Translations under genes and position numbers: made by a program
The notes under the pieces: generated by a model
What the model saw: only the letters and a program-made list of their open reading frames with translations
The model's database searches: none
Told to the model about the DNA's origin: nothing
NCBI GenBank assembly: GCA_047495785.1
Contig: JBLDXI010000015.1
Coordinates: forward strand, 3,658,001-3,722,000
Direction: 5' to 3'
From: Lepidodermella squamata
Lineage: Eukaryota > Animalia > Gastrotricha
DNA: 64,000 nucleotides
Shown here: in pieces, positions 3,402 to 45,464 of the stretch
Numbering within the stretch: position 1 is the first letter of the stretch
Layout: each line of letters starts with the position of its first letter

Positions 3402-4967
3402 TCAAGCTCCTGGAGCGTTGCGACCTTTGAAATGGCGCTCCAAGTCCTGGTCACTCGCCACGGTTAACCACTCATTCATGGCGCTACCACTACTTGCCAG
3501 CTTCCCATCACAATTTTTTGTCTGTTGATCAGCTTCAATTGCTGATTCTGAGGAAAACCCCAAAATTGCCAATACAATAAATTAAAATAAATAGACATAC
3601 TTAATAAACTTTCGAAGCCTTGAAGCCTGCCGATGTAACAGTGATTGTCATTCAAACCTGCGCTGAATACCAGACTGTCAGGCGATTCGATAAATATACT
3701 TCTCGCATATAGGAAAGGTCGAATAATTCCCGCATCTGTTGTCGGTACCGAAAGCATCATAGCAGGGTCGAAAAGTATCGGCGTTGTGACGAGAACAACT
3801 CGTAACGTTTTAGCATTGATCAGGGTTAGTTCAGCACAATATTCTGCATCAAATAAATTTCAGCCATGTCTCAACATCTAATAGCCTTACTTCTCCCGAA
3901 TCTTTTCATTACAGCGTGAGTCATCGATAGATAGTAATCCCCGCTGTATTGGACAAGCGGCGAGCCGCCCCGGAGTACAAAACCGCCTGTGTCGATTCGG
4001 TTGCTCCCGCCAGATATGAACGTGCAGTTTAGCTTTCGCGAAGTTCCATCGGTGAATGGCTCGAAATCGCATTCCATCACCCGCATTTCTGGCGCAAACT
4101 GATATACAAACCGCAGTTTGCCTTCATACACCCAGGGAGCCCAGTTTTTCTCAATTCCATTCAGATTATCAGCCTTGATTGAATACAACACGTTCTCGTC
4201 GATTGACCAAAGATATTGCCTCCTGAACATTGATTATAAGAATATAAAAATCGGTAAACATCGATAAAAAAATACCGCCAGGTCCCTCCACCATGATTAT
4301 GTCCGTTAATAAAATTCATCAACAAATCGCCATTGATTTCTATCAATCTTGGGTCTTCGGGTCCTGTGTACAGTGTGTCCTGAACCGGGCTTGGGATCCC
4401 CAGGAAGTGCCCAGAATTTCGAATAATTCTAAGATCTTTATCTAGCTGCAACACATAGGCCGTACTATCTTGGTACCGATTCCTAACATTGCCGCCCCAA
4501 TGGTCAAGGCGGAGCCAAACTCGAAAGGCACAGTTTAGTATGCCATTTCGAGGTAGGCAGGAGACTTGGAACGGGTACGCATCACCATGAGCCATCCACT
4601 GCTCGGACCGAATGTGTTCGGCGAACATTTGTTTCACGTGATTGTTGATTGTTGGCGAGAAATTTATCAGGATCGAAGTTTCCACTTCTGCGGAACTTTC
4701 GTTTGTGACTACGGCGTTGGAACAGGCCAGTTTATTGAAATGACTGGCTCGTAGTTTGTAGGTGAAGTTAGTATCGCCTGAGCGTAGGAATCTGAACCTT
4801 CGGCTATGCGTTGAGCTCGCATTGAGGTAGTTTCCAGTTTCCTCTCGGGTTACTATGAATCGCCCAGTTTCAGTGAAGAAAAAGAAAAAAATCCCAACCA
4901 CAGCCAAAATTCCCAATGACTTGAATGCACTGTTCCGGCTGAAGTAATTGCGGCTAATCCGTAGCAT
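3402..4967 (-). CDS. BMT/GT91-like glycosyltransferase copy 1, intact, 4 exons, ~470 aa
   Basis: Exons 4967-4276, 4222-3891, 3843-3601, 3547-3402 splice in frame (1413 nt); N-terminal TM anchor; YTGPEDPRL, EKNWAPW and LRGGSP motifs. Confidence 0.8.
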
Positions 4968-5774
4968 TCTAGGTTCTGCTGGATATGTTTATTCGCGTCT
5001 TTAAGGTTTCAATTATTCAGCCATCGATTTCGTTAGAAATTATTTTCTAGCGATACATCTCGCTGAAATGAGCTCACGCCAGTTTTTGAGTGGGAGGGCA
5101 GCGTCTCTACCTAACTTTCTTTTATTATGCATAACTTCAGATCAAACATGACTGGTTTGTCTTAGCAAGGTTTTAGCGGCATATTACTACATTGAACTGC
5201 AGGTGTCAGCAGGCTTTGCTGCTGCTGCTATCTTGAATCTCGATGTTTGGATTGGGTTTGCATCAGAGAGTGGAGCCGTGAAATGGTCCAGTTTGCGTAT
5301 CGAGCTAATGCACTTTTTCCGCTCGCGCATTAGCGGAAATGCATTAGCTCGACCCAAGCAAAACCGGTCGTGGAACCGAGCTGATAAAACTGAATTGACG
5401 TGAATAATTGTGTTTGATACTTTAACAATAATAAAGCCTTTATCACTCGCATCGGTTTCAACAGAGCTGCAAAAATAGTCAACTATTGAGATATAGATTC
5501 TGATTCTACAGAAAAGCCCTACCTTTGAGATGAGACAGTGGTGCTTCGCTGAGTCGTAACTGCCTCTGATTTCTGATTCTGATCAATTAACTTCAGATTA
5601 TCAGGTTGAATTGAATACAACACGTTCTCATCGATTGTCCGAAGTTATTGGCTCCTGAATTTTATATGAGCGGAGTTTTCACGGCTTCACTTCAGTCATC
5701 GATTCCCAGCAAGCGATACATCTCACGCCAGTTAGTGAGTGGGAGGGCAGCGTCATCTCCCTATAGCCTATAGC

Positions 5775-8700
5775 CATAGACAATAATGTTACAGATCGGA
5801 CACTCACACACTTCGCATTGAAATTTAATTATGAACTTTGTACCGTGGATCGGCCATTATAAATTTGGCCGAAAAAAAGCATATCTTATAAATTCTTGGA
5901 AAAAATATCAAAAAATCAGGCATTTTTTGACGGTCATAATGGACCAAACCCTGTCGCGCGAATCGGCTTCGTTATCGGGAAAATCAATATCGAAAAATCG
6001 ATTATTTGCACCATGCGAAACTATGTTGCGTAATTATGACTCATTACTCACTCGAAGAAAAACAAGCTGTGCGAGATATTTTCATGCAAATGTTTATCAA
6101 CAACACACTTGAAATTCGACCCTTTTAGCATGCGCTCAGAGGAAATTTTCAAAGAATGAGTTCAGGATTTTCGGTTTAAAATCTTTCATCAGAAATCCAC
6201 CATGATAGCTCATTGAGATCGTTATTTTTAATTTTTAATTTTTAATTTTTTTTTAATTTTTAATTTTTAATTTTTCAATTTTAGAAACGAGCATGCGGCT
6301 CGTTAAAGTTCGATACTCGTGGTTGATTGCCTGGATGAATTCCAATACTAATCGCCAGCGAGAATTGATGAAGAAGGATTTTAGCCTAAACGACGATGAA
6401 GATCGAATATCACTTCGGCTAGCGCTTGTCGCGCGAGGCTGTCGTGTTCGCGACCTGAAGAAGAAGAAAAGGCCCTCTGGTCTAAAACTTCGCGAATTTA
6501 ACGAGAAGGAATTCGAAATTTCGATCTACAAAATTGGCGAAAAAAAGGGCCAGATTGTTGCCGAAAACTGTGATACCGAAAATTCAGCGGAGGTCGAGAA
6601 GTCTATTGATTTTAACGCATTGCCATGCCCTGCTCTCGACAACTTGGCCTCGACCAGTGCCACCGTCTCGGAAAATGAAATCCCGATTGTTCGGCGACCG
6701 GGTCGAGCAAAATATACAAGAGAACAACTCCAATCCAAGCTTAGGGTGGCTACAGTGACTTGCAGCCGAATGAGGCGGCAAATATTGTCGCTTGAAAGCA
6801 AAATTTCAAAAATACAGCAAAGACGGGATTCTCTTGGCGAGGCTGGAAAACAATTGGTTGACGAAATGGAAAAAATTGCATCAAAGCCACTACATGGACA
6901 CCGATATTCAAATTTATTCAAGGAAATGGCAACGGGTACATTTCCTATTTTTGATTTTATTTTTTTGCATTTGCAAAAATATTAGGAAAATTAGAAAAAA
7001 TCAAGTTAAATTTGGAAATGAAAATTCACAAGAATTTTTAATATATATAAAATATTCTATTAAAGTTGATTTATTAATTTTTATCAATTTTGAATATTAT
7101 ATATTATTAATAATTTTTTATCTGAATTTTTTAAATTTCAATTTGTAATATTTTCAGGCCTGCATCCATCTGCTCGGATGAAACTACGTGTCTATTTCGG
7201 GAAATGCTTGCCATCTGAGCGAACTGTCCGTCGATGGCTTGCCCAGGTTGTCGTTAAACCCGGGTTGCATCAGCTCGCCTTGTCTTTGTTGGAAGCCATT
7301 CGGTTTAAATCGCCGTCAAAGCGCCACTACGTCATCCAGATGGATGCGATGGTAATTAAGCGGGCGGAATATTTTCACTTTGGCGATGGAACGGTGCATG
7401 GCTTGGTTGATGCCGGGTCATTCAATACTTTGCCCGATGTTGAAAAGCAGCTCGGTAAACCTCCACATGAAGCTGTTGTTTTTCTAGCAGTTTCACTGTC
7501 AGGTGGTGTGTGCTACCCAGTATGCACTCTTTTGTTGGAATCTACGAGCGAATCAATTCAATCATCCGTCTTGAAAGCAATTCGTCAGGAATTTGTGACG
7601 CGAGGCTTGCATGCCATTGTTACAACGGCCGATGGCCACCGCGCAAATGTGAAGACTATGCAAGGTTTCGAGGAAATTCCGACCAACATTTTTCTACCAT
7701 TTCCAGCCGCACATGAGTCCAGTTGGTACTGGAGCCAGGACGCTACTCATTGTCTAAAGCTCATAAGAGCTTTATTTGCCAAATGGGGGATTCTTGTGTT
7801 CACGCACCATGGCAAGGTTTTTAAGGCATCGTGGCTTCACATCGTTGAATTAATTCGACTTCAAAATACTGTTGGCCTCCACCTTCGTACCAAGCTAACC
7901 AGTTCACACTTGGCATGGGCTAAGTGGCCCATGAAGGTCACACTGGCCGTTCAGATATTTAGCGGCAGTGTGGCGAATGCACTTGCTGTGCTGCGAAGCA
8001 TGCCTCAATATCAGCTGAACTTTGGCGATAGCGAGGGTACCGAGACTTTGTGCAGAATCATCAACACTCTCTGGGATTGCCTCAACCAGCGCAACCTTTC
8101 AGATGTCGAGCCGAATCGGCGTCCTGTTCGAAAGGAAACATTCCCGATCTGGAAATCGAAACTCGAAGAGGCAGTGAATGTTCTTCTCAGTCTGACGGAC
8201 GTGGTGGGCAATATGGCTATCACCAGCACATTGAGCTCTGGTGTACGCGGAATGGTTCTGGCGATTAGGACAACTACTGCTGTTGTGGAGTATCTATTGT
8301 TTAGCTGCGATGTTGCCTTTGTTGCGACCTACTATCTGCTGCAAGACAGCCTTGAGCTGCTATTTTCTTTTGCACGTCAATTTAATGGATTTGCGATGAA
8401 CCCAACACCTGAGCAGTTGCTCGCCGCTATTCGCGGCTACATGATTCAAAGACATGTTTTGGCGAAAGGCAATGTTGAAAAAACGTTGCGTTTTAACAAT
8501 GTTACGATTTTCGACTACATCAAGAAACCGCTGTATGAAGGTGACGATGCTCAGGAGGCAGTGAGTTTGAATCCTCCTTAATTTAAAAAATAGCGAAATT
8601 TTACATTTTTGGCAATTAGTTCACGAAATTTTTCAAGGCTCCAAAACCTGAAAAATTCACCAAATAATTATCCAGCCTAAAATAAGTATTGAAGCATTTT

Positions 8701-11407: not shown

Positions 11408-12973
11408 ATGCTGCAGATTAGCTGCAATTACTTCAGCCAGAACGGCACATCCAAGTCGATAGGCCTAGGTATTTTAGCTGCTGTTGTTACTTTGTTATTT
11501 TTCGTCACTGAAAATGGCCGATTCACAAATTCAAGGCTATTCAGATTCATAACAACCCGAGACGAGATCATTTACTCGTCAAGAAACTACCTCGATTTCA
11601 GCTCTAAGCATATCGAGAAGTTTAGATTCCTACGCTCAGGCGATACTAATTTCACCTACAAACTACGAGCCAGTCATATCAACAAACTGGCCTGTTCCAA
11701 CGCCGTAGTCACAAACGAAAGTTCGGCTGAGGTGGAAACTTCGATCCTGAGAAATTTCTCGCCAACAATCAACAATCACGTGAAACAAATGTTCGCCGAA
11801 CACATTCGGTCCGAGCAGTGGATGACTAATGGTGATGCGTACCCGTTCCAAGTCTCCTGCCTACCTCGAAATGGCTTACTAACTTGTGCATTTCGAGTAT
11901 GGCTCCGACTAGACCATTGGGGCGGCAATGTTAGGAATCGGTACCAAGATAGTACGGCCTATGTGTTGCAGCTAGATGAAGATCTTAGAATTATTCGAAA
12001 TTTATGGAAAGTAGAAGCCTCAAAAACCACCAAAAAGTAAGCATCTGTTAAAGGTCAGGCTTCTTTTTAGATGAGGCTTAAATCTACTTCATCCAACACT
12101 CACATCTCATGCGGTCAGCTAACAGCAGGAGGAATACTAAGTGAGATAAAAAAAACAAAAACAGCCGAACAGGATTCAATCCGGAACTATTAAAATGTGC
12201 TAGGTATGATCGAGAAAAAACCCAAATGAATAAATCTCATCGAATTTTATTGGAATAATTGGAATAAATAAATCAAATTATCTTACTTGGTATTCCTCCT
12301 AACATCCGCATCTGGAGTGGACCTCCATGTGCGTAAAAGGGCTTTTTATCATACCTGTTAGCATGTGCACTAGGGCAGCGGAGAGAAATTAATCCACGCG
12401 ACCTATGCAAGGTAGGGCTCTGCATTTGTCAAATCGGATTTACCTAGGCTTTTAAATGAGACAGGGCACTAAACGAGGGGGTTTAGTATTTCAGAAAATA
12501 CGGTATTTCTGAAATATATTTGATGCAGAATATTGTGCTGAACTAACATTGATCAATGCGAAAACGTTACGAGTTGTGCTCGTCACAACGCCGATACTTT
12601 TCGACCCTGCAATGATGCTGTCGGTACCGACAACAGATGCTGGAATTAATCGACCTTTCCTATATGCGAGAAGTATTTTCATCGAATCACCTGACAGTTT
12701 GGTATTCAGCGCGGGTTTGAACGACAATCACTGTTATATTGGCAGGCTTCAAGGCTTCGAAAGTTTATTGAGTAAGCCAATTATTTTTAAAAATTTCTTA
12801 AATTGACCATTTTGGGGTTTTCATCAGAATCAGCAATGGAAGCTGATCAGGAAACGAAAAAATGTGATGGAAAGCTGGCAAGTAGTGGTAGCGCCATGAA
12901 TGAGTGGTTAACTGTGGCGAGTGACGAGGAACTGGAGCGCCATTTCAAAGGTCGCAACGCTCCTGGCGCTTGA
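11408..12973 (+). pseudogene. BMT-like copy 2 with internal deletion/replacement
   Basis: Matches copy 4 up to ~12001 (LRIIRN); ~500 bp of unrelated DNA then replaces the GPEDPRL segment and all of exon 2; exons 3-4 resume ~12529-12973. Confidence 0.85.
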
Positions 12974-14662: not shown

Positions 14663-14671
14663 CCGAGGCCG

Positions 14672-17095: not shown

Positions 17096-19808
17096 TCAAG
17101 CTCCTGGAGCGTTGCGACCTTTCAAATGGCGCTCCAGTTCCTCCTCACTCGCCACGGTTAACCACTCATTCATGGCGCTACCACTACTTGCCAGCTTCCC
17201 ATCACAGGTTTTCGTTTCCTGATCAGCCTCCATTGCTGATTCTGATGAAAACCCCATAATAGCCAATTTCAGAATTGTTTGCAATATAGACATACTCAAT
17301 AAACTTCCGAAACCTTGAAGCCTGCCAATATAACAGTGATTGTCGTTCAAACCCGCGCTGAATACCAGGCTGTCAGGCGATTCGATGAAAATACTTCTCG
17401 CGTATAGGAAAGGTCGAATGATTCCCGCATCTGTTGTCGGTACCGACAGCATCATAGCAGGGTCGAAAAGTATAGGCGTTGTGACGAGCACAACACGAAA
17501 CGTTTTCGCATTGATCAAGGTAAGTTGAGCACAATACTCTGCATCAAATAAAGTTAAGAAATTAATTAGATGTGTCTAGAGATCGAGCCTTACTTCTTCC
17601 GAATCGTCTCATAACAGCATGAGTCATCGAAAGATAGTAATCCCCGCTGTATTGGACAAGCGGCGAGCCGCCCCGGAGTACAAAGCCGCCTGTATCGATT
17701 TGGTTGCTTCCGCCTGATATGAACTTGCAGTTCAACATTCTTGAAGTTACATCGGTGAATGGCTCGAAATTGCACTCCATCACCCGCATTTCTGGCGCGA
17801 ACTGATATATAAACCGCAGTTTGCCTTCATAGACCCAAGGAGCCCAGTTCTTCTCAATTCCATTCAAATTATCCGCCTTGATTGAATACAATACGTTCTC
17901 GTCGATTGACCAAAGATATTGCCTCCTGAACATTGATTATTGGAATATAAAAATTGTTAAACATCGATAAAACAATACCGCCAGGTCCCTCCACCATGAT
18001 TATGCCCGTTAATAAAATTCATGCTTATTTGCAGACCCCCCCTAGAAAAGTGAACGACGAGAAATTCAAATTTCGCGTTCTTCCGCATGTTTTTCACTGC
18101 AAATAAAATTTGTATTGGAAAACAAATTTAAAAACTAAAATAAGAAAGAAATTAGAATTTTAAAAAATATTTTGTTTACATTAGCAACGGGTTTTCGTTC
18201 GTTCGTTGGGCAACGAGCGCGCTAGGCCGCGGCGTCGTCCTAGGCTTCCCTACGTCGCAGCGCAAAAACTATGAGGGGTAGATCATTTCTGTAAATTGCG
18301 CTGAACTCAGCATGGTCGAATTACCTAGAAACCGTTGAAAAACCGATAAGTCAGAAAAATCGACATTTTGCCCCTCCAGCGCCTTAGTACCCCCTTAGGG
18401 GTCATCTTAGGTCATCTTGGTGATCTCTCTGGATCTCTAACCGAGACACGTGGAAGCTTCTAATATTGATTTTCAGATTCTCCGCACTCGATTTAGTATA
18501 GAAATGATCTTTAGGAGACATCATGACTGCCCAAAGTCATTTGACGAAATGGGGTTGTAGGTCAAGATGACACGCTAACCCACCTTAACTAAAGATGACT
18601 AATGAAGATCTCTTACGACTCAATGTGTAAAGATGTTCTCTCTATAAGATCATTTCTATACTAAATCGAGTGCGGAGAATCTGAAAATCAATATTAGAAG
18701 CTTCCACGTGTCTCGGTTAGAGATCCAGAGAGATCACCAAGATGACCTAAGATGACCCCTAAGGGGGTACTAAGGCGCTGGAGGGGCAAAATGTCGATTT
18801 TTCTGACTTATCGGTTTTTCAACGGTTTCTAGGTAATTCGACCATGCTGAGTTCAGCGCAATTCACAGAATTGTTCTAACCTTCACAGTTTTTCATCTAC
18901 AACATTGGGAACGCTAGAACGACGCCGCGGCCTCGTTGCCCAACGAACGAACGAAAACCCGTTGCTAATGTAAACAAAATATTTTTTAAAATTCTAATTT
19001 CTTTCTTATTTTAGTTTTTAAATTTGTTTTCCAATACAAATTTTATTTGCAGTGAAAAACATGCGGAAGAACGCGAAATTTGAATTTCTCGTCGTTCACT
19101 TTTCTAGGGGGGGTCTGCAAATAAGCTAAAATTCATCAACAAGTCTCCATTGATTTCTATCAATCTTGGATCTTCAGGTCCTGTGTAAAGTGTGTCCTGA
19201 ACCGGGCTGGGAATCCCCAAGAAGTGTCCAGAATTTCGAATTATTCTGAGATCTTCATCTAGCTGCAACACGTAGGCCGTGCTGTCTTGGTATCTATTTC
19301 TGACATTGCCAGCCCAACGGTCGAGGCGAAGCCATACTCGAAATGCACATGTTAGTATTTCGCCCCGAGGCAGGCAGGAAACTTGGAAAGGGTACGCATC
19401 ACCATGAGCCATCCACTGCTCGGACCGAATGTGTTCGGCGAACATTTGTTTCACGTGATTGTTGATTGTTGGCGAGAAATTTATCAGGATCGAAGTTTCC
19501 ACTTCTGCGGAACTTTCGTTTGTAACTGCGCCGCCTGTACAGGCCAGTTTATTGATATGACTGGCTCGTAGTTTGTAGGTGAAATTTGTATCGCCTGAGC
19601 GTAAGAATCTGAACCTTCGGCTTTGCGCTGAGCTCGAATTGAGTTTAGTTGTCGAGTTTGGGTAGTTTCTTGTCGAGTATATGATCTCGCCTCGGCTGAA
19701 TCGGCCGGTTTCAATGACGAAAAACAACAAAATCACAACTGCAGCTAAAATGCCAAACGACTTGTATGTGCTGTTTCGGCTGAAGTAATTGCGGCTAATC
19801 CGTAGCAC
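17096..19808 (-). pseudogene. BMT-like copy 3, interrupted by a foldback element; start codon reads GTG
   Basis: Colinear with copy 1; insertion 18023-19126 in exon 1 just after GPEDPRL; the position homologous to the copy 1 ATG is GTG (19806-19808). Confidence 0.9.
18023..19126. mobile_element. Non-autonomous foldback/Mutator-like element, 1104 bp
   Basis: ~480-bp inverted arms starting GCTTATTTGCAGACCCCCCCTAG, ~135-bp spacer, 10-bp TSD TAAAATTCAT (18013-18022, 19127-19136); empty site visible in copy 1. Confidence 0.95.
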
Positions 19809-22739: not shown

Positions 22740-24355
22740 ATGCTACAAATTAGCTGCAATTACTTCAGCCAGAACAGCACATCCAAGTCGATAGGACTCG
22801 GCATTTTGGCGGCTGTTGTCATTTTGATATTTTTCATCACTGAAACTGGTCGTTTCACAAATTCAAGGCTATTCAGATTTATAACAGCCCGAGACGAGAT
22901 CATATACTCAACTAGAAACTACCTCAATTCTAGCTCAACACATAGTGGAAGGTTCAGATTCCTACGCTCAGGCGATACAAATTTCACCTACAATCTACGA
23001 GCCAGTCATATCAATAAACTGGCCTGTACAGGCGGCGCAATTACAAACGAAAGTTCCGCAGAAGTGGAAACTTCGATCCTGATAAATTTCTCGCCAACAA
23101 TCAACAATCACGTGAAACAAATGTTCGCCGAACACATTCGGTCCGAGCAGTGGATGGCTCATGGTGATACGTACCCGTTCCAAGTTTCCTGCCTGCCTCG
23201 TGGTGACATACTAACTTGTGCCTTTCGAATTTGGCTCCGCCTTGACCGGTGGGGCGGCAATGTTAGGAATCGATACCAAGATAGCACTGCCTATGTGTTG
23301 CAATTAGATGAAGATCTTAGAATTATTCGAAATTCTGGGCACTTCATAGGAATTCCTAGCCCGGTTCAGGACACACTGTATACAGGACCCGAAGACCCGA
23401 GGTTGATAGAAATTAATGGCGATTTGTTGATGAATTTTATTAACGGGCATAATCATGGTGGAGGGACTTGGCGGTATTTTTTATCGATGTTCACCAATTT
23501 TTATATTCCTATAATCAATGTTCAGGAGGCAATATCTTTGGTCAATCGACGAAAGTGTGTTGTATTCAATCAAGGCTGATAATCTGAATGGAATTGAGAA
23601 GAACTGGGCTCCTTGGGTCTATGAAGGCAAACTGCGATTTATATATCAGTTTGCGCCAGAAATGCGGGTGATGGAATGCAATTTCGAGTCATTCAACGAT
23701 GAAACTTCAAGAATGTTGAACTGCAAGTTCATATCGGGTGGAAGCAACCAAATCGATACTGGCGGTTTTGTACTCCGAGGCGGCTCGCCGCTTGTCCAAT
23801 ACAGCGGGGATTACTATCTTTCGATGACTCACGCTGTTATGAGACGATTCGGAAGAAGTAAGGCTCCATCTTGAGACACATCTAATTAATTTCTTAACTT
23901 TATTTGATGCAGAATATTGTGCTCAACTAACCCTGATCAATGCGAAAACGTTTCGTGTTGTGCTCGTCACAACGCCTATACTTTTCGACCCTGCTATGAT
24001 GCTGTCGGTACCGACAACAGATGCGGGAATTATTCGACCTTTCCTATATGCAAGGAGTATCTTCATCGAATCGCCTGACAGTCTGGTATTCAGCGCGGGC
24101 TTGAACGACAATCACTGTTACATTGGCAGGCTTCAGGGCTTCGGAAGTTTATTGAGTAAGTCTATATTGCAAACAATTCTTAAATTGGCTATTTTGAGGT
24201 TTTTATCAGAATCAGCAATGGAAGCTGATCAGGAAACGAAAAATTGTGATGGAAAGCTGGCAAGTAGTGGTAGTGCCATGAATGAGTGGTTGATCGCGGC
24301 AAGTGACGACGAACTGGAACGTCATTTTAAAGGTCGCAACGCTCCAGGAGCTTAA
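22740..24355 (+). CDS. BMT/GT91-like copy 4, intact, 4 exons, ~484 aa
   Basis: Exons 22740-23473, 23526-23857, 23913-24155, 24210-24355 in frame; all motifs present. Confidence 0.8.
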
Positions 24356-29783: not shown

Positions 29784-32205
29784 ATGGCTGTTTTACGACG
29801 TCAAATTAGGTGTAAAACCAGCTTAATTTGGATTATTCTATGCTTTGCTATTATTTCGATATGCTTTTATCAGACTCTACGATCACCGAAAGGGTACAGG
29901 CTGATTTCCAGGAATAGCGAATTCTTTCGCCAAAATCAACTCCTGGCTGATAGCTCATCAAGAGATGGAGAATTTTTCCGAATCACCAAAGTTCCAATTG
30001 CAATTTACAACCAAACGCTCCGGGGCTATTACTTCAACCCCGAGTTATGTGATCAAGGCCCGTTGTTGAAAGAATCAACGGCAGAAGTCAGCGTTTCGAC
30101 TCTACTCGACATCACGCCACTTGTCCGGTCTCATGTGAGGAAAATGTTCGCCCAACATGTGCTCAACGAGTATTGGATAGCCGATGCGAACAGCACGCCA
30201 TACGCCTTTCACCCAGCCTGTATTCCTCACCGTGGGAAGTTGACATGTGTCACCCGAGTTTGGCTCGACTTCGACGGATTCAAGGCAAAACCGATGCTAA
30301 ATCGATTTCAGGAGAGTTACCTATACGCTAATGACTTCGACAGTCAATTACGAGTGATTCCGAAATCGAATGGAATCCTTGGAATTCCGAGTCCGATTCA
30401 GGAAATCCGATATACAGGACCTGAAGATCCTAGGATGGTTATTATCGACGATTCAATCCACATGAGTTTCCTTCAAGGCCATAATTACACAACGAGTTTG
30501 TCAATTTTCCGAGGGAAAAATTCCTAATAATTCTCTACTTTTCGACAGGTATGAGATATCCAGACCGGCGGCAATTTATCTGGTCATTCGAAGATAGCTC
30601 GATCTATACCCTCAACGTAGATGGTTTCAAGTACCACAAAATGGAGAAGAACTGGTCACCTTGGGTTATCGACAATATCCTGCATTACGTTTACCAGTAC
30701 CTACCATCAATGCGAGTTATCCGATGTGATCCTAACTCAATTCAAGACGACCAGCCTCGGACGATGAACTGCAAATTTATCAAGGGCGACGGGGGAGGTC
30801 ATACGAGGGACCTTCTGCTCAGGGGTGGCTCATCGGTTATTCATTACAAGGAGAATTATTACATGGCGCTGACCCATGTTGTGGTGGCTAAACGGAGGCC
30901 AACAAGTAGAAGTAGGCGTTTCTTTATATTTTACGATTTTACGAAGTGTTATTTCATACGCATCCATGCATATTCATAACTTTTCATACATATTTCTTTG
31001 TATAAAATTGTATTTTTTAACAACACAATGTTTAGGAATTGGGGTTAGGGTTAGGGTTAGGGTTAGGGTTAGGGTTAGGGTTATGGCTTGGTTAGAGCTC
31101 AGGGTCAAGGTTAGGGTTGGTTTAGGGTTAGGGTTAGGTCGAGTTTGGGGTTTTTACTAAGTTCAATTTTAGAGCCCTTGCACTTCACCAATGACCATAT
31201 TCAAGCGGAAAAAAATTGAATTCGTTGTTGGAACCCCTTATGCGTGTTGCGCAACTATTTTTAAATTTGGCAAATTTTTGGAGGAAATTTAAACTAATTT
31301 TATTAAATTAAACCTATACTGATAAAATACTTCGCGATTAAACCGGAGAAATAAATAACGTACCGGAGAAAACCCGGAAAACCCTGATGGTAACTGGTTC
31401 GGTAATTTTCGGTATTTTACCCTGTAGGACCAAATTTCTCCGGCCTTCTTTAATCCCATTAACAGGTGACATACTAGATTACTATTCTTGATTTTTTTGA
31501 TTTTTTGAATTTTTTCAAAGTTTTTCTTGCTACACGATGATAGTTTGTCCCTCACGTTAGGGTTTCTGAACCCTTTTCGGTGTATTTTCATTTTGCTTGA
31601 GTTACTTAGAGGACACGCTGTATAAACCGAAAATGGTGTTTCCTTAATGATCCCAGCTAGATTTAATGGAAAAAAATGTGTATGAAAGGTTTATTTTATT
31701 TATTTTTATTTTAAAATTAAAGAGTATGCATCTCAAATCACGTTGATTAATCGGGCTAAAATGGAGGTGGTATTTGTTTCGTCTCCGATTTTTATCGACG
31801 CTGAAACTATGCTGAGCATTCCGTTCACCGTCAGGCACATCACGGCGCCATTCCTGTACACGACCAGCGTATTTCTGGAGTCTTATAACAGTTTAATTTT
31901 CACGGCCGGGGTGAACGATAACCATGGATTTATTCTTCGCATTGAAGGGGTCGAGAAGCTTCTAGGTATGCCCTAATAACTTGGATGAGTCCTATTCTTT
32001 ACTTTCGATTTCAGATGCTGCAATCGCAGGTGACAAAGCCGCCCAAAATTGCCGCTACGACGTCGAACGAGCTGCTAACGAGACTCTGGTTTGGCTACGA
32101 GACGTCAGCATGGGTGAAGTTAACAATCACTTTCAAGGAAAAAATGCATTTGTTCCGGTTAAAAAACCCGGCAACCACACCAAACATCGAAAAAATAATT
32201 TATGA
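29784..32205 (+). CDS. BMT/GT91-like copy 5, 4 exons, ~502 aa
   Basis: Exons 29784-30495, 30549-30911, 31723-31965, 32015-32205 in frame; YTGPEDPRM, EKNWSPW, LRGGSS. Confidence 0.8.
31041..31139 (+). repeat. Interstitial (TTAGGG)n telomere-like array inside intron 2 of copy 5
   Basis: About six perfect TTAGGG units followed by degenerate units. Confidence 0.85.
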
Positions 32206-32254
32206 AATTATTCATTTCTGAATTTTTAGATTTTTGTTATACAAAAATTTGCAT

Positions 32255-33877
32255 ATGGCAGTGAGAAGGGAGCTCAAATTCAAGGTTATAATATGTGCTG
32301 TAATGTTGGCTTTGGCGTGGGTAACCTTGTTCCAGCCAGGCGTAACCAAATCTAGCAGCGATTTCCAAATTTTCAAAATCTCAAAACTTCAAGACGATGT
32401 AATCTCGGTTGGGCATCTTCGAGGGAATAACCTGTTCAGCTACACAATGCGAGGAGTTATGCTTCGAGATTCGCTCTGCAATAGCAATTCAACTTTAGAA
32501 GAGTTCCAATCCGAAGTTGAGACATCGGTCCTACTAGATTTTTCAGCGCTTGTAGTCCCTCATTTCAAACAAATGTTCCCTGAACATGTTTGGAAAGAAC
32601 CGACTCTCTCAGGTCCAGGACCTTTCGCCCTTCACCCCGCTTGCCTGCCGAAAGATGGTCGATTACTATGCTTCTGCCGCGTTTGGCTTCGATTGACCCC
32701 AGCTGTCCGCGAGGGATCGAAAAATCGCTACCAAGAGAGCCAAATGTACATGTTGGAGTTGGACGACCAGCTTAACGTAGTTCGCGGGTCGAAAAAGCTC
32801 TTAGGTATTCCTAGTGCTATTCAAGACGAGCGAAATACAGGGCCGGAAGATCCGAGGTTGATCTCTCTTCACGACAACGTTTACATCAGCTTCATCAATG
32901 GCCATTTATATCCGAATGCAAATAGGACATTCAGGTAAAATTAATTTGTTTAGATTTTTTATAGTTTACATTTTTATTTAAATTTGAAAATTTGAGAATT
33001 AAATTTTAATTTTAATTTTTTAATAAATTTTTCAATTTTTAGACGGCAATTTCTTTGGTCGCTTGATGACAGTGAACTGTATACCGTGAAGGCGGACATA
33101 CCCGGCTATCACAAGTCAGATAAAAACTGGGTGCCTTGGGTTGTTGGCGAGAAATTCTACTACATGTTTCAATACCTTCCGGAGATGAGGGTTCTCGAGT
33201 GCAAATTCAGGGACAGAAATGTTGAAAAGCCTCAAATTTTGCATTGTGATTTCATTCTTGGCGATGGCCATCGTCCAACTAAGAGCTTGGAACTTCGAGG
33301 AGGATCGCCATTGGTTTACTATTCTGACAATGACTACTACCTTGCTTCAACTCATGTCGTGCTGAAGTTGAATAAAATAACTAGAAGTAAGTCGATTTCC
33401 TAACTGGAATTTTCCATCACTTTTTTAATTTTTTCAGAATATTCTTCCCAACTTATACTGGTCAACGCTCGAGAATTTCGAGTGGTCTTTGTGTCATCGC
33501 CGATTTTCATCGACCCAGACATGATGACTAGCATTCCACTAACCGTGAATCACAGTTTCCGTGCATTCCTTTACTCAACGGGCCTAATTGTGGAGAACCC
33601 GGACAGCCTGATACTGACCGTTGGGTTAAACGACAATCGCGGATACATGATTCGACTGCGCGGAGTGGCAACTATGCTAAGTAAATCTCGCTAATTTACC
33701 GTCGAAATAATCTTTATTTGCTATTTAGGGAAAGCTATCTCGAATGATCTGAGTTCGGACCTTCGGCAATGCGCTGAAAAATCGAAAGAAGCTGCTTCTG
33801 CAATGAATTCTTGGCTTATCAAAGTGAGTAATCACGAAGTCGACAAAATGCTCAAATCGAACGTGTCCCATATATGA
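32255..33877 (+). CDS. BMT/GT91-like copy 6, 4 exons, ~471 aa
   Basis: Exons 32255-32934, 33043-33386, 33438-33680, 33729-33877 in frame; NTGPEDPRL, DKNWVPW, LRGGSP. Confidence 0.8.
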
Positions 33878-35802: not shown

Positions 35803-36292
35803 TTTTTTGGCAAAATAACCGGTCTCTTTTGGTATATAGGATACGCGTTGAAAGCGGAGCGTGGGAGGTGTTTGTTTCTCTGCTGCTGCTGCGGAGGTTA
35901 GAGATAGCGATATTTCCGTGTCGCGGAATGCTTTATAGCTAGTAATAAAAACGCATGCTTTGATACCGGTGGACAAGGGCCAGAGCCACGGTCTATTGCG
36001 CTGTGCGATAACGTCGTTTTCTTTTGCGGTTTTTATTGCTCAGCGAGAGCGCGGCGCAGGTGGGAGCGGCAAATAATATACAGCCATCCTCCTAATATAG
36101 TGGTGACTTATCAGCAAACAAAGAGAAAACAATGCGTTCCTACTCCGTGAGTCGCGTTACATGTGTTGTCACGCATGGCTAAAAAATAACAACACACTTC
36201 ATGATAATATTATATACAGACAGATATATACACATTTATTTTAATAAATTTGCCAGAACTCAAGAATATGGTATAATATGGTGTGTAATTTT

Positions 36293-41134: not shown

Positions 41135-41313
41135 TTTAGTTAGTGAGACGCACCAGTTTTTAAGACAAAGGCCGTATAGGAATAAATCAATTGTGTAACA
41201 GGCAGATTTATTTATGACTTGTGCAGTTGAGGTCTGACGTGCTAAAATAATCGATAAACCCCACACACCTGCGGCTTGGTTTTTTTCGATACAACTAGAG
41301 GCAGTTTAGCACA

Positions 41314-43017
41314 ATGGAACCGCAATTCAAGCTAATACCTCGAAAGTTCATTTTCTACGGATTTTTTACATTGGTAGCCCTCGGTTTTATAACCGTGCTA
41401 TTTTACGAGCAATTACTGCTATTGAGGGTTCTACCGCGTAGAGGTCGACATTTTTGGAGGAAGGCCATCAATTGTTTCCAACGAGTTCGATATTTGGAAA
41501 ATGATTTGCATAATCTTGATTTCGACACTGGGGAATACGAGATCAGCGATTTCAATTCAACAATCAGCCCGCCGCCGCCGATTACTGACTTCAAATTATC
41601 GACTAAATTGAAGGAAAGCTCGCCGTATAGTTACCACCTACACGGAATTTTTCATTCAACCACCTGCGACATGAAACAAAACGACCCGGCTAAGGGTGTT
41701 CAAACCCTGTTTCGAGAGGTTCGGTCGTCTATTTTGTTCTCATTCACGCCCCATGTGAAATCTCATGTGGCTAAAATGTTTTCGAAGCAAGTTCGCGAGG
41801 AGGAATGGTTCAGGTTGTACGCGTTTCATTCAAGCTGTTTGCCTTACAAAGGCGCAATGACATGCGCTGTTCGGGTTTGGCTGCGGCTCAGCCGATTTCA
41901 GGCGTCTTCAGCCGATATTCGAAACCGATTTCAAGACAGTCAGATTTACATGTTTCAATTAGACAACAAGCTGTCGTATATCGAAAACTCGGGGCGGGTT
42001 GTAGCAATACCATCGCCTGTCAATGACATTTTCTACACTGGCCCGGAAGATCCGAGGCTGATAATAGTGAATGGCCAGCTATTTATCAGCTTTATTAACA
42101 CTCATTTCAGTGATAAAAAACGAAAAAGGCGGCAATATCTGTGGTCGGTCGATAGAAACGAGCTCTTCGATGTCGATGTCAATAATTACGAATTAAAATG
42201 GGCCGAAAAGAACTGGACACCCATGACTAATAGCAATAACAACGCCCTGAGCTACATCTATCAATTCATCCCTGAAATGCGGATATTGAACTGCAATTTC
42301 CCAACGAAAAAGGACGACAACTCGGTTCGATGTGCGTTTTTGATTCGAGACAAAACGGCAAAGACAATTTTGGAGAAATTTGAAGAGCCGGATTTCGAGT
42401 CGATTCTACGAGGCGGTTCTCAAGCGGCTCAATATTCAGGAGATTTTTACATCGCGATGACTCACACGCTTCAAACTTCGTACCCAGATTCAGGGCAAAG
42501 TAATTGACCTTTTTTTTTAATTCGACAGATTTTTTTTTGACAGTTGTCCCATAGTTTATGCTGCTCAGTTGGTGATGATTCATGTTGCCGATCGGCGGCT
42601 AATTTTCGTCTCATCCCCTATCCTGATCGATCCTAATTTAATGAGTTCGGTGAAAACGACTGTTGGATCGGTGAATAAGCCGTTTCTCTACCCGGAAAGT
42701 ATCTACGTCGAAAATCCGAATAGCATCATTTTCGCAACTGGCCTGAACGATAATGAATCATACCTGGTCAGACTTCAAGGGATCGGCTCAATGCTGAGTA
42801 TTTTTATTAATTAAATAAAAAATAAAAAATTTAAAAATTAATTTTTTTAGGGGCTGCGATTGAAAATTATGAGCAGCTAAAAAAGAAGTGTTCCGCAGGC
42901 CAACTCAGTGATAAGCGATTTAAATCAATCTACTCGGAGATGGAAGACTGGGTGAAGTCGAAAAATATCGCTGTCCTAGACAACCTTTTCACGAAAAGGC
43001 CTGATATAGACCCGTGA
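41314..43017 (+). CDS. BMT/GT91-like copy 7, 3 exons, ~531 aa
   Basis: Exons 41314-42499, 42555-42797, 42851-43017 in frame; YTGPEDPRL, EKNWTPM, LRGGSQ. Confidence 0.8.
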
Positions 43018-43296
43018 TTTGAGAAAATTATAATAAATAAATGATCCACTGCCGTTATATATATAGCTATGTTGTTGTGACTCAATTTCAGCGAAATTTG
43101 CGGCGATTAGTACCCGGATATGTCGAACAATGCGCCTAGGGAATGAGTATTCACTAAGCGATAAATCCACCTTAATTTGTTCACATTAGTCCGAAAATCA
43201 ATAGACTATTATTTACACTAAGCGTGAAATTTTTAAAATTGTTGTTGAGCCTATGTAAAACAAACAAACACAATTTTAGTCACATACAAAAAATTT

Positions 43297-45464
43297 ATGG
43301 CTAAACATATGAAATATTTGATCCTAATACCGCTTGTTATAGCGGTTTGTTTCTCGTTCGGTATCTTATTTATGGCCGAGCAGACGACCATGTGGATGGC
43401 GGCTGAAATCAGCGAGCAAAAGTTTGCTATCAAACGATTTATATTGCCGCAAAGCTACGTCGTAGGCGATGGGAAGCAGTCATTTCGGATTCATAATAAT
43501 GGCGAGGAGTCGACAAGATTTTGGTTCCCATTGTCCGGGGTAATACCTAACGTCTACTGCTCAGACCGCGGCGAGACAAGGTGGTCGCAATCTGATAATA
43601 GCCCAATCAATGAACTTAACGGGCAAGCTGAAACTACTGTTCTACATCGATTCTCACCGTTCATAAATGACCACGTGCGAGGCATGTTTGCCCACCAGAT
43701 CACGCAGGAGCAGTGGTTTGTGATTTATCCTTTTCAAATATCATGCATTCCTAAAAGCGAAGACCGACTGGTTTGCGTCGTTCGAATTTGGTTTCGCCTC
43801 GACCGATTTGAGGAGGCTAGCGATTTTGTCAATCGTTTCCAGGATAGCTATTTCTATCAAATCGAGCTGGACAGTCAGCTGAATTACATTAAAAACTCGG
43901 GGAAAATAATTGGCATTCCGGCTGCGATCCAAAATTTACATTACACAGGGCCTGAAGGTATGAATTAAATTTGACCGTTTGACAAGTGAAAAGTGGGGTT
44001 TGGCGTATGTTCTGTATTTTCCAGCAAATGGTAACAATTTTGTTGACTTAAGGAGGGACGATTCTTGGATTCCTAGATTACTCAGTTTATCTTGGCGATT
44101 TTTAAATGTTCAGACCTCTAGGGGGCTCCCATCCACCTCAAAGGACGAGAGAAACCCCAAAGTGTCGCCAAAGCTTATAGATATTGGTTGAAGTGGAAGC
44201 ACTGGCTTGATTGAACTCAGTGCTTCCACTTCAACCAATATTAGTTTCTTTTTATTGCACTCATTTTTGCACTCTCAACCTAGAATTTTAGAATGAGTGC
44301 AATAAAAAGAAACTAATTTTTTTAAGCGCGCATTTTTTTCGAAATCAGCAATTTTCACGTGTGAACTTAGACGCCCATTTTCTCAACAACCCTGATCGCT
44401 TATCAGCATAATTTTGATATCGTTCGACTCCTCGTTCATTGATCTTGAAAGCGGCATCAAAATCTCACGATGTCAAAAATATCGCCAAGCCCCACTTTTC
44501 ACTTGTTATTAACGGTCAATTTATTTATTTGTAAAGTTTCTGACTGTTGCCACAGATCCTAGACTGATTGCTATTAATGGATCGATTTTCGTCAACTTTA
44601 TAATGGGACATGACCAGCCCGGGATTTCAGGAACCTTTCGGCATCAATTTCTCTGGTCGCTAGAAACAAGCAGTTTATTCGATGTTGAAATAAATGGCTA
44701 CAAGCAGAACGCATTCGAGAAAAACTGGTCGCCTTGGGTCGTCAATGGAAGCCTGCTATTCGTCTATCAACTTCTACCCAAACCTAGAATTTTGCACTGC
44801 CCGATCGTTAAAACACGAGCTTTCAGGTATGCGAACTGCTCATTTGCCGCAGGAGCGCCGAAACAAGGTAAAAAAGTTGAAACCACCCTGCTAGTACTTC
44901 GAGGCGGCTCGCCTTTCGTTCACTACATCGGAGACTATTACATCGCTGTCACTCATTCAGTACAACCAGCGTATTCGGGAAAGGGTCTGTTATTCTAGAT
45001 TTTTCTAATAATTTTATCCTTTTTTATTTTATCAAGCATATGCCGCTCAACTGACGCTGATTAACGGACCAGCTGGCCGAGTGGTTTTCGTATCGTCACC
45101 TATTTTACTTCACCCGAGTGTGATGAAGTCGCTAAAAACAACAGACCGTAACATTCTTCGCCCCTTTTTGTATGCCCGCAGCATTTTTATCGAGGATGAA
45201 AACACGTTCGTCATCGCTGGCGGGGTGAATGATCACGACAGTTTTCTCATCCGCTTACGAGGAGTAGCAGCTATGCTTCTCGACGCCATTGAAAGCGATC
45301 GGCGTCGATCGAAGGAAGAACGCAAATCGCCAGATTCTTGTAGTAATCTCGAGGAAAAATTGCTAGGTGCTTACAAAGCCATGGAAACTTGGATTACTCA
45401 GAAAAATCTGAAGGAACTCGATAATTATTATTACAGAAATGATAAAATTCAGATTAAAAACTAA
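43297..45464 (+). CDS. BMT/GT91-like copy 8, 3 exons, ~505 aa
   Basis: Exons 43297-43957, 44556-44984, 45037-45464 in frame; an intron splits GPE|DPRL; EKNWSPW, LRGGSP. Confidence 0.8.
43971..44519. mobile_element. MITE inside intron 1 of copy 8 with two internal hairpins
   Basis: Imperfect ~35-bp TIRs TTGACCGTT..ACAAGTGAAAAGTGGGG.TTGGCG; internal inverted repeats at ~44181-44241 and ~44241-44316. Confidence 0.8.

What the first reader, a model, noticed from the sequence alone, without database searches (positions are those of the whole stretch)
3402..45464. Eight-copy expansion of a yeast-type beta-1,2-mannosyltransferase-like family in an animal genome
Seen: eight paralogs with an N-terminal TM anchor (Golgi type II topology) and conserved RVW, NR(F/Y)Q(D/E)S, TGPEDPR, KNWxP, LRGGS and G(L/V)ND motifs, embedded among clearly animal genes and carrying spliceosomal introns. 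Known: GPEDPR/EKNW/LRGG is the pattern of Candida/Pichia BMT enzymes (GT91), related to GH130/GT108 beta-propellers, and beta-1,2-mannosides are known from yeasts, Leishmania and bacteria rather than as a standard animal glycan. Inference: a horizontally acquired or rarely retained enzyme, amplified into a possible stepwise pathway for an unusual mucus or surface glycan.
Basis: partly seen in the sequence, partly recalled or inferred. Interest (0 to 1): 0.85.

Follow-up and report, generated by a model that had tools for sequence, protein, structure and literature searches.

The report
Animal cluster of beta-mannosyltransferase-like genes
This small invertebrate carries eight neighbouring copies (six intact, two broken) of a gene related to the yeast enzymes that add beta-linked mannose to surface sugars; relatives exist in worms and lamp shells, so it is an old, undescribed animal branch of that enzyme family rather than a recent import from yeast.

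Summary
Window 3402-45464 contains eight paralogous loci with short GT-AG introns, lying among animal genes. Six look intact (g1, g4-g8). g2 has lost the catalytic core. g3 has lost its ATG and carries a 1.1-kb transposon.

The GT91/GH130 link is supported:
- Pfam BMT hits fall just below threshold.
- Profile-profile comparison to BMT-positive proteins gives probability 99.8%.
- A confident model of a full-length close relative is a five-bladed propeller (Z 20-24 to GH130, 18-19 to Leishmania GT108).
- The catalytic Asp and the E/K pair typical of beta-1,2 enzymes are kept.

"Yeast-type" and recent transfer are not supported:
- Related genes occur in a nemertean, an annelid and a brachiopod.
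- g7 and g8 have separate orthologs in another species, which share an intron position.
- Young copies show dN/dS of 0.09-0.16.

The ultimate origin stays open. A single animal clade has the best likelihood, but grouping with fungal/protist BMTs is not rejected.

Function is inferred, not shown: Golgi-lumenal beta-mannosyltransferases. No RNA evidence was obtained.

The scan had already noted GT91-like clusters on other pieces of this genome. Moderate interest.

The parts
3402..4967 (-). g1, intact BMT-like gene (470 aa). Exons 4276-4967, 3891-4222, 3601-3843, 3402-3547.
   Evidence: Gene model with GT-AG introns of 47-53 nt and no stops. The exon-2 piece hits Pfam BMT at 19.8 bits.
11408..12900 (+). 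g2, pseudogene. The N-terminal exon runs to ~12002 and the C-terminal exons start at ~12505. The core (GPEDPR to LRGGS) is replaced by ~500 nt of unrelated DNA.
   Evidence: ORF listing and DNA alignment with g1/g3/g4; self-comparison.
17096..19808 (-). g3, recently disabled copy. The start codon is GTG instead of ATG. Exon 1 is interrupted. The rest of the reading frame is still open (478 codons once the insert is removed in silico for the comparison).
18016..19133 (.). Non-autonomous DNA transposon (foldback/MULE-like) inserted in g3 exon 1. Terminal inverted repeats of 207 nt (98%) and 301 nt (93%). 10-bp target duplication ATGAATTTTA.
   Evidence: the repeat finder I1, I2 and D12; alignment gap relative to g1/g4; junctions read.
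22740..24355 (+). g4, intact gene (484 aa). Exons 22740-23473, 23526-23857, 23913-24155, 24210-24355.
   Evidence: 93% identical to g1 over the aligned columns. dN/dS against g1 is 0.16.
29784..32205 (+). g5, intact gene (502 aa from ATG 29784). Exons 29784-30495, 30549-30911, 31723-31965, 32015-32205. The second intron is 811 nt and contains a GT microsatellite.
32255..33877 (+). g6, intact gene (471 aa). Exons 32255-32934, 33043-33386, 33438-33680, 33729-33877. It starts 49 nt after the g5 stop.
41314..43017 (+). g7, intact gene (531 aa). Exons 41314-42499, 42555-42797, 42851-43017. It lacks the first intron of g1-g6.
   Evidence: Pfam BMT 26.9 bits. Ortholog P0005/L001 in another species.
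43297..45464 (+). g8, intact gene (505 aa). Exons 43297-43957, 44556-44984, 45037-45464. It has its own intron inside the GPE|DPR codons and no third intron.
   Evidence: Ortholog P0001/P0151 (L002) is 56% identical over 243-249 aligned columns and also lacks the third intron.
43968..44522 (.). MITE-like insert that enlarges the g8-specific intron from about 45 nt to 598 nt.
   Evidence: Inverted repeats I3 (24 nt, 96%) and I8; sequence read.

Best explanation
The window holds a tandem or inverted cluster of an old animal gene family: six working copies and two dead ones. Each encodes a roughly 470-530-aa type II membrane protein. Its lumenal domain is a five-bladed beta-propeller of the GH130 / GT108 / GT91 (Pfam BMT) superfamily.

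Shown:
- Homology to BMT proteins.
- The fold, in a full-length close relative.
- Conservation of the active-site positions: the Glu-Asp of GPEDPR (the Asp is the GH130 catalytic acid), the Lys of EKNW, the His of 'TH' and the Asp of G[LV]ND. The Arg of LRGGS is also kept, but 7fip has no Arg at the aligned position, so it has no GH130 equivalent here.
- Purifying selection on the young copies.
- Conserved introns, and orthologs in a second species.

Inferred:
- The proteins sit in the Golgi with the propeller in the lumen.
- They act as inverting glycosyltransferases that move mannose from GDP-alpha-mannose onto mannose-containing glycans, making beta-mannosidic linkages. The linkage is most likely beta-1,2, because the E/K pair marks beta-1,2 specificity in GH130.
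- The deeply diverged paralogs (35-47% identity) probably differ in acceptor, as the Candida Bmt1-9 enzymes do.

The family was not recently imported. It is shared with nemerteans, annelids and brachiopods. Whether it entered an early spiralian by transfer or is a rarely retained eukaryotic gene is unresolved.
For: Homology:
- The window profile finds 437 proteins at E<=1e-3. Of the top 99, 68 match Pfam BMT, best 2.9e-34.
- hhalign of the window profile against a BMT-positive group gives probability 99.8%, E 1.1e-28, with GPEDPR, EKNW and LRGG in register.
- g7 exon 1 scores 26.9 bits against a cut-off of 28.3. The nearest relative, P0001, scores 30.0.

Fold:
- AlphaFold model of P0003, which belongs to the window clade: pLDDT 86.4, pTM 0.83.
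- Foldseek top hits are all GH130 and Leishmania GT108, E 1e-10 to 1e-7.
- VIA Z is 20-23.6 for GH130, 18.4-19.2 for GT108 and about 16 for GH43.

Active site:
- GPEDPR aligns to GVEDPR of the beta-1,2-mannobiose phosphorylase 7fip.
- Intermediate sequences that pass Pfam GH130 are themselves hit by the window profile. Their profile hits 7fip at E 1.2e-10, pairing EDPR, the K, the H and the C-terminal D.
- In GH130 the residue before the catalytic Asp, together with the R150-equivalent, sets the linkage. E/K means beta-1,2 (PMC7660257).

Topology: N-terminal hydrophobic helices (models).

Genes are real and old:
- dN/dS is 0.09-0.16 at dS ~0.33 for g1/g3/g4, and dS is saturated for the other pairs.
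- Orthology pairs g7/P0005 (98/97) and g8/P0001 (89-92).
- Intron B is conserved in L001 and L002.
- Named relatives in Lineus, Owenia and Lingula lie between animal genes.
Against: - No window protein reaches Pfam's BMT gathering score. The full spliced proteins could not be submitted by reference.
- The specific fold match was obtained on a relative about 30-35% identical (P0003). The window's own exon-1 fragment, which lacks the last blades, gave only generic propeller matches.
No listed run is on record as RNA.
- Animals are not known, to my knowledge, to import GDP-mannose into the Golgi. A lumenal GDP-Man enzyme needs a transporter, and I could not look for one.
- Donor, acceptor and linkage are inferred from residues at 12-15% identity to solved enzymes.
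- The equivalence of the EKNW Lys to the GH130 Lys rests on a transitive sequence alignment, not on a superposition.
Confidence: 0.6

Rival explanations
1. The proteins are glycosyltransferases of this fold, but with another donor or linkage. Candidates are a different GDP- or UDP-sugar, or beta-1,3/beta-1,4 mannose. The 'beta-1,2-mannoside' label would then be wrong.
For: - Identity to any characterised enzyme is only 12-25%.
- The window clade and the annelid/brachiopod clade differ in the key motifs: GPEDPR/EKNW against GPYDPR, GCSDAR and D[ST]NW. Specificity has therefore drifted within the animal family.
- Nucleotide-binding residues are poorly conserved even within GH130 subfamilies (PMC12814180).
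Against: - The window clade keeps the exact E-D and K pattern of beta-1,2 enzymes and of the fungal and ciliate BMT proteins.
- The closest solved sequences by profile are the two beta-1,2-specific phosphorylases.
Confidence: 0.2
2. They are lumenal or secreted GH130-like hydrolases or phosphorylases. They would break down beta-mannosides, for example yeast mannan in the food, rather than build them.
For: - The best structural matches are GH130 phosphorylases and beta-1,2-mannosidases.
- GH130 hydrolases carry signal peptides (PMC7660257), and these proteins enter the secretory pathway.
Against: - By sequence they group with BMT (GT91) transferases, not with GH130. No Pfam GH130 hit was found for any window piece.
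- They keep the position aligned with the phosphate-binding His, which GH130 hydrolases lack.
- Phosphorolysis is a cytosolic strategy, while these proteins have an N-terminal membrane anchor.
Confidence: 0.12
3. Origin rival: the window clade was acquired separately from a fungus, protist or giant virus. This would be independent of the annelid/nemertean/brachiopod genes, and would predate the split from the species behind P0001-P0005. It was then amplified.
For: - AU does not reject window clade plus fungal/protist BMTs (p 0.42).
- The window clade keeps the fungal/ciliate motif forms.
- The Owenia and Lingula genes are intronless in intron-rich genomes, as expected of transferred genes.
- Giant-virus proteins share the fold at E 1e-13 to 1e-9.
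- Other agents' notes, untested here, suggest a rotifer-like genome with other foreign-looking genes.
Against: - The best-likelihood tree keeps the window clade with the other animal sequences. It is 4.9 lnL units better than the free search and 9.4 better than the fungal grouping. SH-aLRT is 91 in the quick tree rooted on GH130-like sequences.
- No non-animal sequence falls inside or next to the window clade.
Confidence: 0.3
4. Artefact: the genes belong to a contaminant (yeast or protist), or the contig is chimeric.
For: Nothing positive. The nearest relatives come from metagenome assemblies without organism names.
Against: - The eight loci are interleaved over 42 kb with Cys-loop channel, 7tm_7, ankyrin and lipocalin-like genes.
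- GC is the same across the window, and the ~50-nt intron style holds across all copies.
- Two copies are hit by TIR-bearing DNA-transposon-like insertions.
- An independent run holds 64% of the sampled words of the g7-g8 stretch.
- Named animal genomes carry relatives between animal genes.
Confidence: 0.02

Closest known systems
[quoted passage not shown]
   Same: - Homologous by profile-profile comparison: 99.8%, E 1e-28.
- Same order of the motifs R..W, GPEDPR, EKNW and LRGG[ST].
- Type II membrane layout.
- Multi-copy families with diverged paralogs.
   Different: - The window proteins fall 1.4 bits or more below the Pfam cut-off.
- They are shorter than most core-only BMT hits: 470-530 aa against about 500-610 aa for most of those, with extremes of 437 and 755 aa.
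- They form a separate deep clade with other animal proteins.
- They carry introns and sit in an animal genome. GT91 was described in a 2021 survey as confined to fungi (PMC8476585).
- Activity is untested.
GH130 beta-mannoside phosphorylases and beta-1,2-mannosidases (e.g. 5ay9, 7fip, 9fj8, 5a7v)
   Same: - Five-bladed propeller: Z 20-23.6, about 280-300 aligned residues.
- Catalytic Asp in an EDPR motif, an E/K pair like the beta-1,2-specific members, and a conserved His and C-terminal Asp (PMC7660257).
   Different: - No Pfam GH130 hit, and 9-15% identity.
- Membrane-anchored and lumenal rather than cytosolic and soluble.
- Extra conserved Cys residues and an Arg in LRGGS.
- Groups with nucleotide-sugar transferases by sequence.
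Leishmania GT108 mannosyltransferase/phosphorylases (MTP/MPT, 6q4w-6q50)
   Same: Same fold (Z 18.4-19.2). Inverting beta-1,2-mannosyl transfer from GDP-Man on a GH130-like scaffold.
   Different: - No detectable sequence match.
- From my own knowledge, not checked here: the GT108 enzymes are cytosolic and build a storage mannan.
- The window proteins have a membrane anchor and a secretory-pathway look.
Uncharacterised BMT-like proteins of Lineus longissimus, Owenia fusiformis and Lingula anatina (e.g. XP_064622464, CAH1784812, XP_013380179)
   Same: - Same family and domain span: local HMM scores of 195-230 bits over HMM positions ~100-455.
- Multi-copy, partly tandem, and located in animal chromosomes.
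   Different: - Separate clade (97/86) with altered motifs: GPYDPR, GCSDAR and D[ST]NW instead of GPEDPR and EKNW.
- The two genes checked are intronless, whereas the window genes have 2-3 introns.

Membership tests
Pfam BMT (PF12141) / CAZy GT91 | Score at or above Pfam's gathering cut-off (28.3 bits) | tested here: not met
   - g7 exon 1 scores 26.9 bits.
- Exon-2 pieces of g1, g3, g4, g5 and g8 score 15-21 bits, and g6 scores nothing.
- Full spliced proteins could not be submitted by reference.
- The nearest relative P0001 scores 30.0, and 68 of 99 homologs match.
Pfam BMT (PF12141) / CAZy GT91 | Demonstrable homology to bona fide BMT-domain proteins | tested here: met
   hhalign of A1 against A6 gives probability 99.8%, E 1.1e-28, over 199 columns. 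20 of the 25 A6 members pass Pfam BMT.
Pfam BMT (PF12141) / CAZy GT91 | Conserved GPEDPR, EKNW and LRGG[ST] motifs in order | tested here: met
   Present in g1 and g3-g8, absent from g2. The same residues are invariant in the BMT-positive set (E318, D319, R321, K368, N369, W370).
Pfam BMT (PF12141) / CAZy GT91 | Type II membrane protein with a lumenal catalytic domain | tested here: inconclusive
   N-terminal stretches of 16-20 hydrophobic residues follow a short basic tail. They are modelled as long helices. No transmembrane or signal-peptide predictor was available.
Pfam BMT (PF12141) / CAZy GT91 | GDP-mannose-dependent beta-1,2-mannosyl transfer | not testable with these tools
   Needs an enzyme assay.
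GH130 / GT108 propeller superfamily | Five-bladed beta-propeller fold | tested here: met
   - Model of P0003 (window clade): Foldseek E 1.7e-10 to GH130 and 5e-9 to GT108.
- VIA Z up to 23.6.
- The window's truncated exon-1 model gave only generic propeller hits.
GH130 / GT108 propeller superfamily | Catalytic Asp at the GH130 proton-donor position | tested here: met
   GPEDPR aligns to GVEDPR of 7fip. The same pairing appears through GH130-positive intermediates at E 1.2e-10. The Asp is the family's proton donor (PMC7660257).
GH130 (as a family member) | Pfam Glyco_hydro_130 match, and a soluble protein without an anchor | tested here: not met
   No GH130 hit for any window piece. N-terminal anchors are present.
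GH130 (as a family member) | E/K pair that marks beta-1,2 specificity | tested here: inconclusive
   The Glu precedes the Asp in all seven core-bearing copies. The Lys of [ED]KNW aligns to the NKD Lys of 7fip only through a transitive alignment. No superposition at residue level was possible.

The most novel reading that the evidence does not exclude
Spiralian animals, including this one, run a fungal-style Golgi mannan pathway. An anciently acquired GT91-like family caps mannose chains with beta-1,2-mannose. Its paralogs act stepwise on different acceptors. It would work together with the GT15 alpha-mannosyltransferase expansions that other first-stage readers of this scan noted (unchecked) elsewhere in the genome. 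This would give these animals a surface or mucus glycan so far known only from yeasts.
Probability: 0.25. Interest if true: 0.8.

Novelty: new variant of a known kind. Interest (0 to 1): 0.5.

Why it matters
GT91 was treated in a 2021 survey as a fungal family (PMC8476585), and beta-1,2-mannosides as a mark of yeasts, Leishmania and some bacteria. I found no paper describing animal members.

A conserved, expanded, selectively maintained branch in at least four spiralian lineages has several consequences:
- It predicts an unrecognised class of animal glycans.
- It gives a concrete set of enzymes to assay.
- It ties GT91 to the GH130/GT108 propeller clan by sequence intermediates and by fold. 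No GT91 structure had been solved as of that 2021 survey.
- It raises the question of how an animal Golgi would obtain GDP-mannose.

It is not a new kind of system. It is a new taxonomic and sequence branch of a known enzyme kind.

Tried and rejected
- Word-indexed protein searches found nothing for g7 exon 1. They found only close paralogs for an alignment of 42 hits and for Lineus P0009. They therefore added no taxa.
- A PDB sequence search with the window profile alone found nothing. phmmer with P0132 also found nothing.
There is therefore no splice or expression evidence. One local self-comparison of window 1-47000 inside the closed script machine did include them, as did local exon extraction.
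- Folding g7 exon 1 alone gave a good but truncated model whose matches were unspecific.
- Comparing intron positions with Lingula and Owenia failed because those genes have no introns.
- Synteny with the related species showed none. The g7- and g8-type genes lie on different scaffolds without tandem partners.
- The organism could not be named. Run and organism names are coded. 'Probably a rotifer' is other agents' untested guess.
- Recent transfer from yeast and contamination were rejected for the reasons given under the rival explanations.


Full report
**What is in the window**

An ORF listing and tblastn with the longest ORF and with a C-terminal exon find exactly eight related loci between 3402 and 45464.

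I built gene models by listing in-frame GT-AG pairs between the conserved pieces. Six genes are open from ATG to stop:
- g1 (-), 3402-4967, 470 aa
- g4 (+), 22740-24355, 484 aa
- g5 (+), 29784-32205, 502 aa
- g6 (+), 32255-33877, 471 aa
- g7 (+), 41314-43017, 531 aa
- g8 (+), 43297-45464, 505 aa

Introns are mostly 47-108 nt with good donors such as GTAAGT, GTAAGG and GTATGT.
- Intron A lies after '...GGGTW' and is present in g1 and g3-g6.
- Intron B lies before 'Y[AC][AS]QL' and is present in every copy that still has this junction (g2's junction lies in its replaced segment).
- Intron C lies after '...SLL' and is present in g1 and g3-g7; the g2 donor also aligns (GTAAGC). g8 lacks it.
- g8 has a private intron inside the GPE|DPR codons. 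It is a ~45-nt intron swollen to 598 nt by a MITE-like insert at 43968-44522.

All six proteins start with a short basic tail and a stretch of 16-20 hydrophobic residues. All carry R[VI]W, NR[FY]Q[DE]S, TGPEDPR, [ED]KNWxP, LRGGS, TH and G[LV]ND.

**Two copies are dead**

g2 keeps the first ~185 codons and the last two exons. About 550 nt holding GPEDPR, KNW and LRGGS have been replaced by ~500 nt of unrelated DNA.

g3 has GTG where g1, g2 and g4 have ATG. An 1118-bp element (18016-19133) sits in exon 1. Its terminal inverted repeats are 207 nt (98%) and 301 nt (93%), and it is flanked by the 10-bp duplication ATGAATTTTA. The rest of the g3 frame is still open, so the damage is recent.

g1-g4 are young copies, 82-94% identical in DNA. 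They are arranged as two inverted pairs.
- dN/dS for g1/g3/g4 is 0.09-0.16 at dS about 0.33. The copies were therefore under purifying selection after duplication.
- g5, g6, g7 and g8 are old. They are 35-47% identical in protein, and silent sites are saturated.

**Context**

The paralogs are interleaved with animal-type genes:
- a Cys-loop channel at 25063-26196
- a 7tm_7 chemoreceptor-like gene at 45516-47039
- three further channel genes downstream
- an ankyrin ORF and a lipocalin-like ORF
- a P-element/THAP9-like transposase at 7178-8581

GC is even across the window. A public run holds 64% of the sampled words of the g7-g8 stretch. I see no sign of a chimeric contig.

**Family**

Sequence evidence:
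- g7 exon 1 hits Pfam BMT (PF12141) at 26.9 bits, against a cut-off of 28.3.
- The exon-2 pieces of five other copies hit the same part of the profile at 15-21 bits.
- A word-indexed search found nothing.
- An exhaustive HMMER search with a profile of the window's own exon pieces found 437 proteins at E<=1e-3 and 94 at E<=1e-10.
- Of the top 99 hits, 68 match Pfam BMT (best 2.9e-34) and 4 match GH130 weakly.
- A profile-profile comparison of the window alignment with a set of fungal, ciliate and other hits, 20 of 25 of which pass Pfam BMT, gives probability 99.8% and E 1.1e-28. GPEDPR, EKNW and LRGG line up.

The window genes are therefore homologs of the BMT (GT91) family. They are a distant branch that Pfam's own threshold just misses.

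**Fold and active site**

Spliced window proteins have no reference, so I folded P0003. It is a full-length member of the window clade from a metagenome contig (372 bits to an HMM of the window proteins). I used a 90-row alignment that included the window exons.
- The model is confident: pLDDT 86.4, pTM 0.83.
- Foldseek against the PDB returns only GH130 mannoside phosphorylases and beta-1,2-mannosidases, plus the Leishmania GT108 mannosyltransferases, at the top (E 1.7e-10 to about 1e-7).
- VIA-align gives Z 20-23.6 for GH130, 18.4-19.2 for GT108 and about 16 for GH43.
- The window's own g7 exon 1, which lacks the last blades, folds well (pLDDT 80). It gives only generic propeller matches, with a GH130 entry at rank 24.

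At sequence level:
- The broad family profile aligns GPEDPR to GVEDPR of the beta-1,2-mannobiose phosphorylase 7fip (E 0.022).
- Four hits of the window profile (P0132, P0148, P0138, P0129) pass Pfam GH130's cut-off.
- A profile built from these four plus P0083, which has no Pfam hit, hits 7fip at E 1.2e-10 and the 1,2-beta-oligomannan phosphorylase 9fj8 at 5e-7. It pairs the EDPR Asp, the EKNW Lys, the 'HT' His and the 'ND' Asp with GH130 residues.

In GH130 that Asp is the proton donor. A Glu before it, together with a Lys at the R150-equivalent position (the 'E/K pair'), marks beta-1,2 specificity (PMC7660257).

The Lys equivalence is transitive and was not checked by superposition.

**Who else has it**

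Named members among the hits:
- several proteins each from Lineus longissimus (Nemertea), Owenia fusiformis (Annelida) and Lingula anatina (Brachiopoda)
- a 'Beta-mannosyltransferase 1' from the blastoclad fungus Sorochytrium
- a protein from the ciliate Blepharisma

The ESM Atlas neighbours by features and by shape are an annelid-dominated BMT cluster (TM 0.75), then diatom, ascomycete, Chlamydiota GH130-like and giant-virus clusters. BFVD shows the same fold in pithovirus-like, mimivirus-like and entomopoxvirus proteins.

The Lingula and Owenia genes I fetched are single-exon genes lying between ordinary animal genes: Amnionless, VIT/VWA and Ank-SOCS. Owenia has a tandem pair.

The five nearest hits (P0001-P0005) come from unnamed metagenome contigs at ~40% GC (one contig measured), whose neighbours include eukaryote-type genes (VIR_N, RRM, ankyrin).

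**Phylogeny**

In a 97-row quick tree and in a 64-row careful tree, the window proteins plus P0001-P0005 form one clade (100/97). Within it:
- g7 pairs with P0005 (98/97).
- g8 pairs with P0001 (89-92).
- g1/g4 pair with g5/g6 (SH-aLRT 96 in the 97-row quick tree, 80 in the 64-row one).

The main duplications therefore predate the split from that second species.

Intron B sits at the same place in the g7-type gene of L001 and in the g8-type gene of L002. The L002 gene also lacks intron C, as g8 does.

The Lineus, Owenia and Lingula proteins form a second clade (97/86). The fungal and ciliate BMTs form a third (94/77).
- Rooted on the GH130-positive intermediates, the quick tree joins the two animal clades (SH-aLRT 91).
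- The careful free search did not join them. A tree with the two animal clades held together is 4.9 log-likelihood units better than the free tree (p-AU 0.62).
- Window clade plus fungal/protist BMTs is 4.45 units worse than the free tree, but it is not rejected (p-AU 0.42).

A single animal clade is therefore the best-supported reading, and it is not proven.

**Interpretation**

Recent transfer from a yeast followed by amplification is excluded. So is contamination.

The evidence supports an old family of at least some spiralian animals, locally amplified here and still turning over: two recent losses, transposon hits, and intron gain and loss.

The evidence cannot say whether the family entered an early spiralian by transfer or is a eukaryotic gene lost from most animals. 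Intronless genes in intron-rich genomes, and fungal, protist and giant-virus relatives, fit transfer. My sampling of names was small (30 of 150 listed hits), so absence from other animal groups is not established.

**Mechanism**

The most likely function is a Golgi-lumenal inverting beta-mannosyltransferase using GDP-mannose. The linkage is probably beta-1,2, with paralog-specific acceptors by analogy with Candida Bmt1-9 (PMC4564806, title and abstract).

This is inference from homology, fold, conserved residues and topology. Caveats:
- There is no expression evidence.
- To my knowledge, animals are not known to import GDP-mannose into the Golgi.
- Identity to characterised enzymes is low.

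**Earlier scan notes**

Other first-stage notes list GT91-like clusters on other pieces of this genome and GT15 (Kre2/Mnt1-like) expansions. One follow-up proposed an operon of mannosyltransferase-like genes.

I did not test these. I did see that g6 starts 49 nt after the g5 stop, with a splice-acceptor-like 'tttttag' 26 nt before its ATG. That fits the operon idea.

'Probably a rotifer' is other agents' guess. No named rotifer protein appeared among the 30 hits whose names I looked up.

**Limits and compliance**

I worked beside them and sent them to no tool call afterwards. A local self-comparison inside the closed script machine included them. No sequence was taken for human.

Noticed in passing
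window 7178-8581 (+), with ORF 6293-6985 upstream: P-element/THAP9-like transposase ORF (TNP-like RNase H and GTP-binding insertion domains). It lies between g1 and g2, inside the duplicated block.
   Followed up: partly
window 18016-19133: Young 1118-bp foldback/MULE-like non-autonomous transposon with very long terminal inverted repeats and a 10-bp target duplication. It is inserted in g3 exon 1.
   Followed up: yes
window 43968-44522: MITE-like element (24-nt terminal inverted repeats, 96%) inside the g8-specific intron. It turns a ~45-nt intron into a 598-nt one.
   Followed up: partly
window 14672-14903 and 15664-15895: Perfect 232-nt inverted repeat about 760 nt apart, next to an ankyrin-repeat ORF (14309-14743). 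It could be another foldback element or a hairpin.
   Followed up: no
window 32203-32257: The g5 stop and the g6 ATG are only 49 nt apart on the same strand, with 'ctgaatttttag' 26 nt before the ATG. This layout would fit a two-gene operon resolved by trans-splicing, as another note of the scan proposed for a sister cluster.
   Followed up: partly
window ~31050-31130 (g5 intron B, 30912-31722): A GT/GTT-rich microsatellite (it reads as 'RVRVRV...') sits inside an unusually long 811-nt intron, in a genome whose introns are mostly ~50 nt.
   Followed up: no
window 28173-28592 (+), 35161-35976 (-), 38643-40017 (+): A lipocalin-like ORF (sub-threshold Pfam hit) and three sizeable ORFs with no Pfam match lie between the BMT-like genes.
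   Followed up: partly
L006 8001-9425 and 12404-13840; L005 8001-9368: The BMT-like genes of Owenia fusiformis (a tandem pair) and Lingula anatina are single-exon genes, in genomes that I know as intron-rich. They are flanked by ordinary animal genes.
   Followed up: partly
P0132, P0148, P0138, P0129 (unnamed JGI/Logan contigs): These proteins pass Pfam GH130's cut-off. Two of them also score weakly on Pfam BMT, and all four are hit by the window profile at E about 1e-8. They are sequence intermediates linking GT91 and GH130.
   Followed up: partly
They lie in g7's last intron and were left out of all later tool calls.
   Followed up: no
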